From: Glycera tridactyla | Taxonomy: Eukaryota | Length of the DNA: 64,000 nucleotides | Assembly: GCA_965644265.1 (NCBI GenBank) | Contig: OZ286475.1 | Coordinates: 57,226,001-57,290,000 of the forward strand | Reading direction: 5' to 3' | The notes under the pieces: generated by a model | Told to the model about the DNA's origin: nothing | The model's input: the letters and a program-made list of their open reading frames with translations, nothing else | The model's database searches: none | Made by a program: the position numbers and the translations under genes | Shown here: piece after piece, positions 17,262 to 23,962 of the stretch | Layout: every line of letters begins with the position of its first letter | Numbering within the stretch: the stretch's first letter is position 1

Positions 17262-18155
17262 GACAATAGACAATAGACAATAGACAATAGACATTACTTT
17301 ATTTATCCAGGTGACAAACAGCATAATGCACAAAAACAAGATAACAAAAACATGTTGCTAGTGACTCAGACCTGGGTCTGCTAATTCTGCTGCGACCTGG
17401 AGCGATATACTTATACAATGAATCATATCCGATCATTGATCATGGTTAACCTTCTCAGAAAAATACGAGATAAGATAGCATATGCAGGTTCCTTGGATAG
17501 GTTCCAGATTTGACTATTGTTAAATTCTCCCTAGAAAATACTGTGATAAACTTAGTCTGTCGCCTTAGGTGTCCAGTCAAATCACCGACAATTGTGAATG
17601 GTTTACTCTGGATTGTCTTAAGGAGTTGATTCACTTATCATGCAAGAAAAGACAGGTGACAATCAGACATTCTCGAGAGAAACTCTGTTGTTCATCCAGT
17701 ATTGCAGAGTTCATCTGGTTATACAATTAGAAGTGAGATGATACAGTAGATAGAGACACGAGATCTGTTGGAGGGGTATACATCAGATTTGATTAACTGT
17801 TCTAATCTAGTGAACCGGAGTTTTCTTTCAGTTGTAACTTGAGACTTCTCTTAAAAATATTTAAACTTTTAGAGTTTCTAATGTCAATCGAGAGATTATT
17901 CCAATTTCTGGCTCCAAAGTTAGATAGACATTTCCTGCCATAATTGGTCCTTGTTCGATTTATTTTTAGATCACCTCTCACTCTCGATCTCGTGTCTCTA
18001 TCTTGATTATCCTGAATTGAAGTGAACATGTGACTCAGGACATGAATCCCATTTCCCTCTATGATTACCTTATACATCAAACAGCTTGTATGGTAGGATC
18101 TGCGAGTCTCTAATCTTACAATTTCTAGTTCAGAGTGCATAACATCTGTGGAATG
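17262..18155 (-). mobile_element. 5'-truncated L2/CR1-group LINE (ORF2 C-terminus, 3' UTR, (TATTGTC)n tail)
   Basis: ORF 17802-18140 (L..RR..H...LMYK...; TR......L...R.RTNYGRK.....GA..WN.L...IR.S.SL..FK..LK) is the typical CR1/L2 RT C-terminus; AATAAA-like signal and heptamer tandem tail at 17262-17295. Confidence 0.9.
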
Positions 18156-18448: not shown

Positions 18449-21092
18449 TATATGGATATATGCAGGAGGGCAGGTGAAAATCTCGCTTCCAGAGATGGAG
18501 CGCAGAGTTCGATCAAGTTAAAGTAACCATCGTTCAGTAGTTGTTGGTGCTCAAGAATCTTCAGGTCAGATTTTCAGATTTTCGGCTGTGATTCGGTTGT
18601 GAGCTAATCACATCCCTGGCATATGCCATGATGAAGGGTGGATCCGATATTCAGAATTAATGGAGATTCATTGTTGACGTACATGATCATTTCGGTGGGA
18701 AACAGAGCAGAAACTTGATGGCATGTCATCGCATGACACAGAGCGATAATACGTTCATTTTGAATGACCGAATGAAAGGAGACAGTAATGATCAGCTAGA
18801 GAGCCACCTACTGGCCAATTACTGACCAATAATTAGAGAGGTCTACCTACATCCGCACCTCCCCGAACACCGCTATTGACAGAGCTAATTCGTCGGAGAG
18901 ACGATTGGCCGTCATGCCCTGGAGATATGCTCGCCGGTCGAGCGTAAATGCGATGCGCTACTCCCGCTGGGAAGGAAAGCTCAAGATTCGTACAAATTGT
19001 TCGGAATCGTTGCTTGGAAAAGTCAAGTGTCCTGTTCATTTCCATGTAATTACAATCTTAGCAAGTTCAATCCATCGTCTAGACAAATCAGTGTGCAGTG
19101 ATTGCTTTAACCCTAATTACTTCTTTCTTACCCAAAAGAATATTAGTGTGAACCCTTGTTTCATCAGTGGCAGGTCTCTATATCGGCCACAAAATTCAGA
19201 AGCCAGCTGGTCCCTGAGTTTATATTTTTAGTTGCAATTGCCCAATGTTGGTAGCCAGTCAATATATTGTCAATTACAACCTCCCAAAATTTTTGCGGCT
19301 GTTGGCTCCTAACTTTCGAAGTAAGGTAGCCAGAGGGTGAATTTGGTATCCATCGCTTACCCACAGGTAACAACATAGAGTCCCGAATGTTCACTATTTG
19401 TCTGTAAATATTGGTGATGTTGTTGGATATCAGAAACCGAAAGTATATGGACGTGCTTCTTGACGTACTGGTGTCAGAATTTGTGGAGAGTGTTTTGGAG
19501 AGTTTTTGCTCACAGTCAGCAAATCATGCACATGACAACGAAGACCATTCTCTGCTGATTATTCTGGCTTTTAGGTCATGAAAATCAGACAAGTATTAGT
19601 GAAGATAGAGCACGATGTTTGTATGAAGTTCTTGTAGCCTTCAGTCACCAGTTGTTTGAGTTTGTTGATCGACAAAATCTCGGTATAAGCCTGGTCAGGT
19701 TTTCAGTGTTTTTGGTAGTGAGGCAGTCACATCCCTGGTCTGAGCTCTTGCAGGTGCATTGGCTGTGATTTGGCAAAGGTCAGATGGCTTGAGGCGGTGT
19801 AATTGTGAAGGGATTAGGACTCGTGAAATTTAGTCGATTAGGAGATGGCCATGAACTCTTGCTCTTCCCACTCCTACTGATGAACATTTGAACCGGAGAG
19901 CTGTGTGGGTGGGGTGGGTGTTCGTGTGTGCATGTGTGTGCTCTTTCTCTGTCTGTCTCTCTCTCTCTCTCACTCATTCTCAGTCTCTTTTTGTCTGTCT
20001 CTCCCCTCTCTTTCTCCCCTGTCTGNNNNNNNNNNNNNNNNNNNNNNNNNNNNNNNNNNNNNNNNNNNNNNNNNNNNNNNNNNNNNNNNNNNNNNNNNNN
20101 NNNNNNNNNNNNNNNNNNNNNNNNNNNNNNNNNNNNNNNNNNNNNNNNNNNNNNNNNNNNNNNNNNNNNNNNNNNNNNNNNNNNNNNNNNNNNNNNNNNN
20201 NNNNNNNNNNNNNNNNNNNNNNNNNNNNNNNNNNCTTCATACATACATGAGCCTATATCACAGAAGAACCCCAACTATGCAACTGGATGTAAGCTTATAG
20301 TCGAGCTCAGAAATAGATGAATGAATAGATAGATCAATAAGAGTAGTGCTAACAAAGAAAATCTTGGGCTTAGCAAACTATTTCAGGCACTAATGGAGGG
20401 CAGAATTAGTGTAATGCGAAAATTGAAGGATGTCAATTTCATAAATGCATCAGCGAGAAATGAACTGTCATTTTGTCAGCACGATTCTATGCACCGCATT
20501 CAGAGGCGTGTTCTGTTCATGGGCAGCGTCCATTTTATCAGATCCATTGTCCATTTCATCCGATCCACTCTACGCTTGTCACCCCGGTCTGAGTGGATGA
20601 TATTAGGGGTTTTCAGTTGGTGATATTAGGGGGTTTTCAGCACACCCATCGTGAAGTCGGCCGGCAGTGAATGGTGAAGGGTCAGATAGTGCCGCAAATA
20701 GATTCGGCGGCACGTGACCGCCACTTAGTTCATCATAAAAGGATCGGTCGCTAGCGTAGAATGACCATAAAGACGGGCGACAGGAGGTGAAAACTTTGTT
20801 TCACTGGTAATGTGACTTGGCACGTTTCAAAAGTGCTCGTGAAAATGGTCGCCATTCGCAGCTCTTTGATGATGACCCCCACGTTGCGCCTTTTGTTCGA
20901 GCCACAGTACTTTTTTGTCAGAAGTCTCATCGAATTGTTGACTGCAAATAAACAATCAAGATGTGCGTTATAGGTTGAAAGCACTCAGGGAGATTAGCTC
21001 AGGGAGAGGCTGTCTGCCCTCTGTCCCTGTCTCTCTTACTGTCTGTCTGTCTAGGCCTAGTTCACTTTCAAACTGCGTCCAATTTCATATAG

Positions 21093-21280
21093 TGTCACCT
21101 TATGTAAAACTCTCCACCTTTTACTCTGGGACTGCACTTCCTATAATAACATTATAAAACTAAATGATTTCAACTTTCATTCAAAACTGGATTCGATTTT
21201 GCTCATTACTTGTGTTCCACTTATATAATTCTATTCGATGCAAATTCATGTGTTTTTCCGTCTTCTAATTTCAGGTGAGT
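21093..21280 (+). other. 3' splice site with 180-nt AG-exclusion zone juxtaposed to a 5' splice site (candidate recursive splice site)
   Basis: TGTTTTTCCGTCTTCTAATTTCAG|GTGAGT, with AG at 21273-21274; no AG dinucleotide from 21093 to 21272. Confidence 0.6.
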
Positions 21281-22351
21281 CTCATGAAATAGCTGGCTTC
21301 AGTGCGATATCAAGTTGAGTTCGCAGTTTCATATACTTTATTTACAGAGATTGGGGGGGGGGGGGGGGGGGGGCACCATGATATGTCCAGTGTGTTTGTG
21401 AGACAAATGGGTGTACTATGTATGTATGATTTACAAAGAGTGACTGCTTTCATTGAATACCCATTTCTGTCAATCAGTTTTGGATGAAAATTTGGCATCG
21501 ATTTTCATCATACCCAGGGAATTGAATCAATGTTTGACCTGCCAGTTGTACCATATACTGGGACCTGCAATAAAAGACTGCCCCAAATGTCACTGAAAAT
21601 TTCTTAAATAAGAGGTATGTTTGACCATATCAGATGAAGAAGGAGCTTCCGAAAAGTGGTCTCTCAAAACAGGTGGTCTCATCAGCAAGTCTCTCCCATT
21701 GTGCTTTCAACTTTGTGAAACCAGATTTTGACATCTTTATTTGACAACATGATTCCCTGCTGGAAGCAAGTTTTTCATCAATCCTTTTGGGAGATGCAGG
21801 ATGGGTGAGTCAAGCGAGTTTGGAGTTGAATTTGGGGGAAAAAATCCAGTCAACCTTAAATATGTCTCAACATCATGCCATTCTGTAGAGACACACAGCT
21901 TGTTTAGAGTTCAGCATTTTGCCCTGGGGACAAACACAGCACCGCATGTTGGAAGTCAGACCCAGTGCCAGCTGCAGTCATTCGGGCCTCTGAAAAAACG
22001 GGAAAACCCCGATGATGGAGTGAGGAGAAGCATGGACGACATAACGTGAATGTTTGACAAATTGTGACGTGTACATGGCATTTTTCAGAGACGACAGAAC
22101 AAGAAAGGAATGTCAACAAGAAATCTGATTGTTCATACCTGTCAGTTTCGTCTTTGATGTGTTTTGACGTTGCTTCGTCAGTCCGATGGTTGATCGTCCT
22201 TTGCATGAAGTGTGATTGTGTCCCAAAAGTGAGGTCGGGCAGATTGTTTACCAGAACTGGGCTTCGGATCAACTGGTCAAGATGCCAATCTCAATAATTT
22301 TGTCGTGAAACCGGAATGTGGAAGTAAAAATGGTTTCAAAAGAGGTGGTCT

Positions 22352-22545
22352 CATTTGTTTTGGTTTGGTTGAGGTTTAACAGCATAGTATGTACCAACCC
22401 AGAGAATAATGTATGCTAGATGTTCTCTCCCCTGCAGGCATCACTCTCACAAACTCATAACACAAGATGATGGGAAAACTGTACTGTAGTGTGAGTAGCT
22501 AACAGTTCAGACACACCTCTACATACCAAACATGAACATATTTTG
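22352..22545 (-). mobile_element. SINE-like dispersed family B
   Basis: Core CTAGATG...CCCTGCAGGCATCACTCTCACAAA...AACACAAGATGATGGGAAA shared with ~31805-31997, 33755-33947, 36186-36307, 47270-47550, 50950-51050 and 57918-58100; simple-repeat tails. Confidence 0.7.
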
Positions 22546-23962
22546 AACCTAACAAATGTTGCACATTTTCGATCCCAATTTTAAAATTATGCAATATTTC
22601 ATGAAATAATTTCTCACACCATAGCTGTCATTAGCTGTCATTGATGGGAAAAATAGATAAATTGACCAATCAAGGAGTCAGATATGTTTTTGTGAGTACA
22701 TTTTGAGTTTGTTGTTTTTGAAATAAGTTTCTCTTCCCAATTTTAATTTTTTTGGCACCAGTTTGGTAAAATGATGCACTATTTCATGCAAATTTCTGAT
22801 TTGGGAAAACTGAATGAATACTCTTGGATTGCAACCTTGCTGAGTTCCAACTGGAATTCTCGGATAGGATACTTTTGTGGCTAATTAGAAGCATTTCTCT
22901 AATTCGTGTCACCGATGGTGTGAACAGAGAAGATTCGCAACTGCCACTGATGGCTTCTGGCGCATCAAATGCTCGCGGGCACGATCTTGTTTCATTATCT
23001 GCGGTCTTGTGTTGCTGATTGTCAACAGCCTCGAGCTGGCGAAACTCTTGAGCTCGCCACGCCGCGCATAATATTGTGATAAAAAGAAGGTAAAAAAACT
23101 TGCAGCGCAAATACAAATGGTTTCTTTATTCGGCGTAGAACATTCGACAGTGTTGGTACTGCATTCAGATGTTAACCAACGTTTGTGCATCTCGTTCTTT
23201 CTCGCAGGCTCATGGATACTGTCAAACCAAAGATGGTCTATGTAGATGGGTGGCCCCTGTAGAGAGGTTGTTTACTATGATTCAAGATTCAACAACTTTT
23301 TATTGCATCTGAACAAAGATATTTACACGAGACCAATTGGTCATATTACGTGCACATGCAACAAATTAACATAGTGCATGCTAAGTCTTGGCAAATTAAC
23401 AGTAATAATTGAACAGCGAACCTTTACATAACAAGACAGACATGAGAAAGCAGTACACAGTAAAATATTTGGGCTATGTCGTGACGACAACCCATAATGG
23501 GAATAAGTTGTACAATCAGTCTCTCCTAGTCATTTGCTCGCACTGATTCACACCTTTTGCGCACACACTGACGCGTTCAAAAATGGATGGCAGGGCAGGG
23601 CAGTAGCTCATTGTATATCGCCGGTATAAGTTGACACAACTGACAAAATGATTAGGCAAAGAACCCATACAGGTGACACGACTAGGCATCTCTGCTACAT
23701 TATATATGATTTAAAAAGAATAATAAATAAATGAATAAATAAAATAAAGAAATGGATTTTAATTTAAAATAAAAAAAAAAACCAAAAAAAAACGACCATT
23801 GGAACATCTTGTGGAGACATCAACATTCGGGTGTCATACTCAGGAACTCTGCTTAGCCACACTATAACACACTCACACACACAGGCTTAAGGTGGGATGG
23901 TTGGTAAGCCAAGGACAGAGTATCAATATGACATTATCGCAGTCGCGATACAGTGGAAGATA

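What the first reader, a model, noticed from the sequence alone, without database searches (positions are those of the whole stretch)
21093..21280. Zero-length exon signature: AG|GTGAGT after a 180-nt AG-free zone
Seen: no AG for 180 nt, a pyrimidine-rich tract, then TTTCAG immediately followed by the perfect donor GTGAGT. All three frames downstream stop within ~45 nt, and I see no strong alternative donor nearby. Established: long AG-exclusion zones mark functional acceptors, and YAG|GTRAGT is the recursive-splice consensus. This is the strongest non-repeat signal in the window.
Basis: partly seen in the sequence, partly recalled or inferred. Interest (0 to 1): 0.75.

Follow-up and report, generated by a model that had tools for sequence, protein, structure and literature searches.

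The report
Candidate recursive splice site, unproven
This spot carries a very good "end of intron" signal directly joined to a perfect "start of intron" signal, as at the stepping stones used to remove giant introns in flies and vertebrates. No RNA data or related genome could be obtained to show that it is used.

Summary
There is no AG at 21092-21272 (181 nt). Then come an 85% pyrimidine tract, TTTCAG|GTGAGT (junction 21274/21275), and stops in all three frames within 44 nt.

The long AG-free run is not exceptional by itself. The same window holds equally extreme runs free of GT, TT, AA, GA or CT in complex sequence.

The composite is rare. CAG|GTGAGT is the only 9/9 match to the U1 consensus on either strand. 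Only 5 acceptor-like sites of this quality exist in the window, and this is the only one followed by GT. A third-order Markov null gives 0.008 such sites per strand per window.

It can be read as the shifted-register donor CAA|GTTGAGT, bounding a 39-nt cryptic exon as at fly ratchet points.

Base skews and GTAAGT depletion weakly suggest + strand transcription. No coding exon was found, and no copy of the block lies elsewhere in the window.

Use could not be tested: no sequencing run was listed and no related genome was reachable. My verdict is a good but unproven recursive-site candidate (about 0.42). Chance (0.30) and an ordinary non-coding or micro-exon acceptor (0.20) remain open. The scan has noted similar sites elsewhere in this genome.

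The parts
21092..21272 (+). AG-free zone (181 nt). It is G-poor (19 G) and T-rich (74 T).
21245..21249 (+). Branch-point-like yUnAy motif TTCAT. The branch A is at 21248, 26 nt from the acceptor G.
   Evidence: This is a motif match only and is inferred.
21251..21272 (+). Polypyrimidine tract TGTTTTTCCGTCTTCTAATTTC, with TT at -6/-5.
21272..21280 (+). CAG|GTGAGT, an acceptor AG (21273-21274) abutting a perfect donor (21275-21280). It is the only 9/9 U1-consensus 9-mer on either strand of the window.
21275..21313 (+). Putative 39-nt cryptic RS-exon. Frames 1 and 2 are stopped and frame 3 is open.
   Evidence: The exon is inferred.
21312..21320 (+). U1-like site AAG|TTGAGT (8/9, no GT in register). 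It can be read as the shifted-register donor CAA|GTTGAGT with its GT at 21314-21315.
   Evidence: The register precedent comes from PMC4856993.
21569..21574 (+). AATAAA, the only canonical poly(A) signal in the 1.1 kb after the site. It matters for the terminal-exon rival.
43019..43027 (+). Second, weaker site of the same type, TAG|GTGAGT. Its AG-free zone is 73 nt, its pyrimidine fraction 0.71, and it has CT rather than TT at -6/-5. Sequence is masked from 43059, 37 nt downstream.

Best explanation
This is a recursive splice site (ratchet point) in a long intron transcribed from the + strand.

Inferred mechanism:
1. U2AF and U2 recognise the tract and the branch-like TTCAT (A at 21248), and then the acceptor AG at 21273-21274.
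2. U1 bound about 40 nt downstream helps define a 39-nt cryptic RS-exon (21275-21313). U1 binds at AAG|TTGAGT, which is the same place as CAA|GTTGAGT read in a register shifted by one base.
3. The upstream exon is joined to 21275, which recreates a strong donor, exon-end|GTGAGT.
4. This donor outcompetes the weak downstream one. In the next step the cryptic exon is removed with the rest of the intron and leaves no trace in the mRNA.

What is shown: the sequence architecture and its rarity. What is inferred: transcription, strand, and every splicing step.
For: - The composite of tract, YAG and GTRAGT is confirmed and rare: 0.008 per strand-window under a 3rd-order Markov null.
- It is the only one of 5 high-quality acceptor-like sites in 128 kb of strand that is followed by GT.
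- It is the only 9/9 U1-consensus 9-mer in the window.
- TT at -6/-5 is present. This is found in 196/197 fly ratchet points (bioRxiv 10.1101/006163).
- A branch-like motif lies at -26.
- An 8/9 U1-type site lies 40 nt downstream. Only 17 sites scoring 8/9 or better occur on the + strand of 61 kb, so about a 3% chance of one within 15-120 nt. This matches the ~50-nt cryptic RS-exon with a weaker donor described for fly ratchet points (PMC8605326).
- /GUNRAGU shifted-register donors are experimentally documented (PMC4856993).
- The cryptic exon has stops in two frames.
- No copy of the block lies elsewhere in the window.
- There is no recognisable coding exon, Pfam hit, tRNA or Rfam RNA around it.
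- Hints of + strand transcription: T>A in 26/32 blocks and G>C in 22/32, GTAAGT 1 observed against 7.3 expected on + but 12 against 8.7 on -, and AATAAA 19 against 35.
- A second AG|GTGAGT lies on the same strand 21.7 kb downstream.
Against: - There is no RNA evidence at all.
- No conservation test was possible.
- It is not known that the window is inside a gene.
- The AG-free run is matched by runs for non-splicing dinucleotides.
- Look-elsewhere effect: roughly 0.0015-0.003 such composites per window by chance, against 565 windows already read in this genome. About one chance case is therefore expected.
- The downstream U1 site has no GT in the canonical register.
- GTGAGT and TTTYAG are not depleted on +. 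Word asymmetries may reflect repeat orientation.
- Recursive splicing has not, to my knowledge, been shown in this animal group. My literature search brought up nothing, but it ranked by term count and is not a proof of absence.
Confidence: 0.42

Rival explanations
1. The site is a chance juxtaposition in non-functional intronic or intergenic DNA. A G-poor, T-rich patch, possibly old repeat debris, happens to end in CAG followed by GTGAGT. It is never used by the spliceosome, or only as noise.
For: - Dinucleotide-free runs as extreme as this one occur for GT, TT, AA, GA and CT in the same window.
- AGGTRAGT alone is at chance frequency.
- With hundreds of windows read, about one such composite is expected by chance.
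- The other three MAG|TTRAGT sites on + have no acceptor upstream, which shows that such U1-like words occur at random.
- A weak 20-nt inverted repeat (20974-20993 / 21692-21711, 85% complementary) brackets the block and could mark an old element.
- No exon, RNA or conservation evidence exists.
Against: - The joint rarity is high: 0.008 per strand-window before adding TT at -6/-5, the 9/9 donor, the 181-nt AG-free run and the U1 site at +40.
- There is no copy within the window.
- There is no target-site duplication at the putative inverted repeat.
Confidence: 0.3
2. The site is a genuine acceptor of a conventional exon, and the GTGAGT start is incidental. The exon could be a 39-nt cassette micro-exon (21275-21313), open in frame 3 and ending at the atypical donor CAA|GTTGAGT. 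It could be a longer non-coding or poison exon ending at GAG|GTATGT (donor GT at 21615). Or it could be an alternative terminal exon using AATAAA at 21569.
For: - The acceptor is strong.
- 39 nt is a multiple of three and frame 3 is open across it.
- A 7/9 donor lies 340 nt downstream.
- A single AATAAA lies 295 nt downstream.
- Expressed RS-exons also exist in flies and mammals (PMC8605326; PMC6224609 abstract).
Against: - Stops occur in all frames within 44 nt for any longer exon.
- A perfect donor at the exon's first base would compete strongly and tend to skip the exon (PMC8605326).
- No homology supports the ORFs around it.
- The 13-residue peptide is too short to test.
Confidence: 0.2
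3. The site belongs to a dispersed transposable element family whose consensus carries splice-like signals. Copies would lie outside this window.
For: - The window is repeat-rich.
- Repeat fragments lie 330 nt and 1.1 kb downstream, at 21612-21680 and 22353-22536.
- The rest of the genome could not be searched.
Against: - A sensitive self-BLAST of 20300-22600 found no match for 20974-21350 anywhere in the 64 kb, although several families recur in it.
- The earlier-findings look-up by sequence was blank.
Confidence: 0.08

Closest known systems
Drosophila intronic ratchet points, i.e. zero-nucleotide recursive splicing (Hatton 1998; Burnette 2005; Duff 2015, preprint 10.1101/006163; Joseph & Lai 2021, PMC8605326)
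   Same: Both have a juxtaposed strong acceptor and donor (Y-tract-YAG|GTRAGT), TT at -6/-5, a prominent pyrimidine tract, and a short out-of-frame cryptic exon of about 40-50 nt. In both, that exon is bounded by a weaker U1-type site, and the ratchet-point donor is stronger than the downstream one.
   Different: The host intron, RNA junctions, lariats and conservation are all untested here. The downstream site lacks GT in the canonical register (TT, or GT shifted by one). The donor is GTGAGT; the fly preference between GTAAGT and GTGAGT was not checked here. The animal is, by an earlier scan note, a worm and not an insect.
Vertebrate recursive splicing through RS-exons (Sibley 2015; Blazquez 2018, PMC6224609)
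   Same: [quoted passage not shown] This recreates a 5' splice site that competes with the RS-exon's own donor.
   Different: Vertebrate cases lie in very long introns of long, often neuronal genes and have cleavable GT donors. Gene context is unknown here.
Shifted-register 5' splice sites (Roca & Krainer 2009; Tan et al. 2016, PMC4856993)
   Same: CAA|GTTGAGT has the /GUN(R)AGU layout of donors that pair with U1 shifted by one base. The example oligo is ACA/GUCAAGUAUA.
   Different: Those donors were validated in human minigenes. There is no functional test here, and the position after GU differs.
Long AG-exclusion zones with distant branch points (Gooding et al. 2006; cited from my own knowledge, not read here)
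   Same: There is a long AG-free stretch upstream of an acceptor.
   Different: A branch-like motif lies at the ordinary -26 position, so a distant branch point is not needed. The length of the run is within what other dinucleotides show by chance in this window.

Membership tests
Intronic ratchet point (fly-type recursive splice site) | [quoted passage not shown] | tested here: met
   TGTTTTTCCGTCTTCTAATTTCAG|GTGAGT, with 9/9 to the U1 consensus and pyrimidine fraction 0.82-0.85.
Intronic ratchet point (fly-type recursive splice site) | TT at positions -5 and -6 (196/197 fly ratchet points) | tested here: met
   Positions -6/-5 are TT.
Intronic ratchet point (fly-type recursive splice site) | Lies on the sense strand of a long intron | tested here: inconclusive
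   No coding exon or family hit was found in 64 kb. T>A and G>C skew, GTAAGT depletion and fewer AATAAA on + hint at + strand transcription but do not prove it.
Intronic ratchet point (fly-type recursive splice site) | Short cryptic RS-exon (~50 nt) ended by a donor weaker than the ratchet-point donor (PMC8605326) | tested here: inconclusive
   An 8/9 U1 match lies 40 nt downstream but has TT in register. A GT is available one base upstream as a shifted-register donor, giving a 39-nt exon.
Intronic ratchet point (fly-type recursive splice site) | RNA evidence: exon-to-ratchet-point junction reads, sawtooth read density, lariats | not testable with these tools
Intronic ratchet point (fly-type recursive splice site) | Conservation of the acceptor|donor core above its flanks | not testable with these tools
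   No related eukaryotic genome is reachable. Exact-protein look-ups found no contigs.
Dispersed repeat copy | Multiple similar copies | tested here: not met
   Tested within the window only. There was no hit for 20974-21350 in a word-7 blastn against the 64 kb. The whole genome was not searched.
Protein-coding exon acceptor | Open reading frame downstream with homology | tested here: not met
   Stops end at nt 18, 4 and 44. Neighbouring ORFs have no Pfam match at or above the curated cut-off.

The most novel reading that the evidence does not exclude
In this genome, recursive splice sites may be built with a dedicated downstream U1 anchor that is non-cleavable, or cleavable only in a shifted register (here AAG|TTGAGT at +40). 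Such an anchor would give exon definition for the ratchet acceptor with little or no risk of including the cryptic exon in mRNA. Two earlier follow-ups of this scan described ratchet-like sites 'each followed by a dead cut signal' on other pieces of the same genome. The present site would be another instance.
Probability: 0.12. Interest if true: 0.6.

Novelty: new member of a known kind. Interest (0 to 1): 0.3.

Why it matters
If the site is used, it would show recursive removal of a giant intron in an animal outside insects and vertebrates, which are the only groups with documented recursive splicing in the papers read here. It would also add a case where the cryptic exon's far end is an atypical U1 site. 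That bears on how ratchet points are recognised without leaking cryptic exons into mRNA.

If it is chance, it is a useful calibration point. Even the best-looking motif in a 64-kb window is expected about once per few hundred windows.

Tried and rejected
- RNA test: the look-up of sequencing runs on 20300-23300 listed no run, so no reads could be laid.
- Exact-protein look-ups of three nearby ORFs, tried to find other contigs or the organism, were not on record.
- Earlier-findings look-ups by sequence and by words gave nothing beyond two leads.
- Rfam at gathering threshold and ARAGORN on the whole window gave no RNA gene.
- Pfam on ten neighbouring ORFs gave nothing above cut-off.
- A naive exon scan (good acceptor, donor 7/9 or better, open frame) gave 12 on + and 16 on -, none convincing.
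- Transposon idea: the 20-nt imperfect inverted repeat 20974/21692 has no target-site duplication and about a 0.08 chance expectation, so I rejected it as evidence.
- 'Dead TT U1 sites are a class': the other three MAG|TTRAGT on + have no acceptor upstream, so no class is visible in this window.
- The poly-G run at 21353-21373 as a splicing element: rejected, because G/C homopolymers are common all over the window.
- Distant branch point as the reason for the long AG-free zone: not needed, since a yUnAy motif lies at -26.
- Roca & Krainer 2009 could not be read. I used Tan et al. 2016 instead.
- I did not use the costly protein searches. No candidate protein was at stake.

Full report
**1. What is there**

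The window is repeat-rich animal DNA: 41% G+C, twelve masked N stretches, many microsatellites, MITE- and SINE-like families and a 293-bp tandem array.

At the finding, the last AG before the site is at 21090-21091. The stretch 21092-21272 (181 nt) contains no AG. TTTCAG ends at 21274 and GTGAGT occupies 21275-21280. After the AG, the three frames reach the end of a stop at nt 18, 4 and 44.

**2. Is it more than chance?**

I took the parts separately.

- The AG-free run. Treating AG as independent events, 0.06 runs of this length are expected in the window. Shuffling the zone's own letters (19 G, 74 T, 49 A, 39 C) gives no AG in only 0.2% of shuffles, with 5.1 expected; GA occurs 5 times. But this zone was picked as a maximum, and the same window has equally or more extreme runs in complex sequence for dinucleotides with no role in splicing: GT-free 225 nt, TT-free 222, AA-free 202 and 190, GA-free 181, CT-free 162. 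The AG-free run alone is therefore not beyond what this DNA produces.
- AG|GTRAGT alone is at chance level. There are two on +, none on -, and 0.86 YAGGTRAGT per strand in 3000 third-order Markov simulations.
- The combination is rare. Pyrimidine tract of 0.75 or more, AG-free for 40 nt or more, and YAG|GTRAGT occurs 0.008 times per strand-window in the simulations, and never with 150 nt or more AG-free. Empirically only five acceptor-like sites (tract 0.8 or more, 40 nt or more AG-free, complex sequence) exist on both strands, and this is the only one followed by GT at all. CAG|GTGAGT is the only 9/9 match to the U1-complementary consensus among all 9-mers of both strands.

With P(GTRAGT | AG) of about 3-6 x 10^-4, a chance composite is expected roughly once per 300-700 windows. 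Since 565 windows of this genome have already been read, about one chance case is expected among them. Chance cannot be dismissed.

**3. Anatomy**

- The acceptor has a yUnAy motif TTCAT with its A at 21248, 26 nt from the AG. An 85% pyrimidine tract follows, with TT at -6/-5 and CAG. The ordinary branch distance means the long AG-free zone is not mechanistically required.
- Downstream, no canonical GT donor scoring 7/9 or better occurs for 340 nt; the first is GAG|GTATGT, with its GT at 21615.
- At 21312-21320, 40 nt after the junction, lies AAG|TTGAGT, an 8/9 U1 match with T instead of G at +1. Only 17 sites scoring 8/9 or better (4 of them without GT) exist on the + strand, so one falling 15-120 nt downstream has a chance of about 3% (0.7% for the GT-less kind).
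- Read one base earlier, this site is CAA|GTTGAGT. That is the /GUN(R)AGU layout of donors recognised by U1 in a register shifted by one base (Tan et al. 2016, PMC4856993, whose 'shifted +1' oligo is ACA/GUCAAGUAUA).
- This reading would bound a 39-nt cryptic exon, 21275-21313, stopped in two frames and open in the third.

**4. Context**

- Repeats: no part of 20974-21350 matches anything else in the 64 kb at blastn word size 7. Repeat fragments lie at 21612-21680 and 22353-22536. A weak inverted repeat bracketing the block has no target duplication.
- Genes: there is no tRNA, no Rfam family, no Pfam hit above cut-off on ten neighbouring ORFs, and no convincing exon by a simple acceptor-ORF-donor scan. 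The window is therefore intronic or intergenic.
- Strand hints that the + strand is transcribed: after masking simple repeats, T>A in 26 of 32 2-kb blocks (p=0.0005) and G>C in 22 of 32. GTAAGT occurs once on + against 7.3 expected, but 12 times against 8.7 on -. AATAAA is 19 on + against 35 on -.
- Against over-reading these hints: GTGAGT is not depleted, and TTTYAG is twice as frequent on +. Repeat orientation may drive such word asymmetries.
- CpG o/e is 0.55 throughout. This fits germline methylation but not specifically a gene body.
- A second, weaker AG|GTGAGT lies on the same strand at 43019-43027. The sequence from 37 nt after it is masked and was left alone.

**5. Comparison with what is known**

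Fly ratchet points are juxtaposed acceptor and donor sites in long introns. They have a prominent pyrimidine tract and TT at -5/-6 in 196 of 197 cases, and they are conserved (preprint 10.1101/006163). They need a short (~50 nt), poorly conserved and usually out-of-frame cryptic exon with its own, weaker donor. The stronger ratchet-point donor wins, so the cryptic exon never appears in mRNA (PMC8605326).

The present site meets every one of these features that sequence alone can show, with one qualification: its downstream site is atypical. Location in a long sense-strand intron, RNA intermediates and conservation could not be tested. No sequencing run was listed, exact-protein look-ups for other contigs failed, and no related eukaryotic genome is available here.

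**6. Earlier notes of this scan**

One search reports ratchet-like sites 'each followed by a dead cut signal' on other pieces of this genome, also without RNA data. I used that only as a lead. The +40 site here was found and counted independently. The other three MAG|TTRAGT words on + have no acceptor upstream.

**7. Verdict**

| Reading | Probability |
|---|---|
| Recursive splice site | about 0.42 |
| Chance juxtaposition | about 0.30 |
| Ordinary acceptor of a non-coding, terminal or 39-nt micro-exon | about 0.20 |
| Copy of a repeat family seen only outside the window | about 0.08 |

If real, it is a new member of a known kind. The atypical downstream U1 site is the only element that might be a new variant.

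Noticed in passing
window, whole; e.g. 720, 922, 1100, 6831, 21353, 43430, 51692 (G runs) and 584, 9625, 28599 (C runs): Homopolymer G or C runs of 10-24 nt are unusually frequent: 13 G and 7 C on the + strand. A and T runs of 10 or more are few (3 and 5). I do not know whether this is biology or an assembly or sequencing artefact.
   Followed up: partly
window, whole; GTAAGT only at 9479 on +: GTAAGT occurs once on the + strand (7.3 expected by 3rd-order Markov) but 12 times on - (8.7 expected). GTGAGT is 23 on each strand. Together with the T>A and G>C skew and fewer AATAAA on +, this may mark + strand transcription of the whole window.
   Followed up: partly
43019-43058: A second TAG|GTGAGTGAGT site on the same strand has a tandem donor 4 nt apart and a 73-nt AG-free zone. 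Sequence is masked from 43059, so its downstream architecture cannot be read.
   Followed up: partly
9749-9913, 27058-27224, 51306-51471, 24670-24824, 61540-61860, 62619-62773: A MITE-like family of about 165 nt has complementary termini (TACAGTCGAACCTG... / ...CAGGTTCGACTGTA). Several copies occur in the window, mostly in the same orientation.
   Followed up: no
2592-4120; 45444-46169; 50312-50701: A 293-bp tandem array has five copies at 98% identity. Partial copies lie 42 kb away, and inverted copies flank a ~4.5-kb segment at 45.4-50.7 kb (arms 96-100% complementary, partly masked).
   Followed up: no
17802-18140 (-): A 112-aa ORF has an ending that looks to me like the C-terminal tail of a LINE ORF2. 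It has no Pfam hit, so this is an impression only.
   Followed up: partly
window, whole: CpG o/e is 0.55, with a range of 0.29-0.68 per 4 kb, and TpG and CpA are in excess. This is consistent with germline cytosine methylation across the whole window.
   Followed up: no
window, whole: TTTYAG is twice as frequent on + (78) as on - (39). Base composition predicts a ratio of only about 1.2. The excess may come from repeat copies in one orientation.
   Followed up: no
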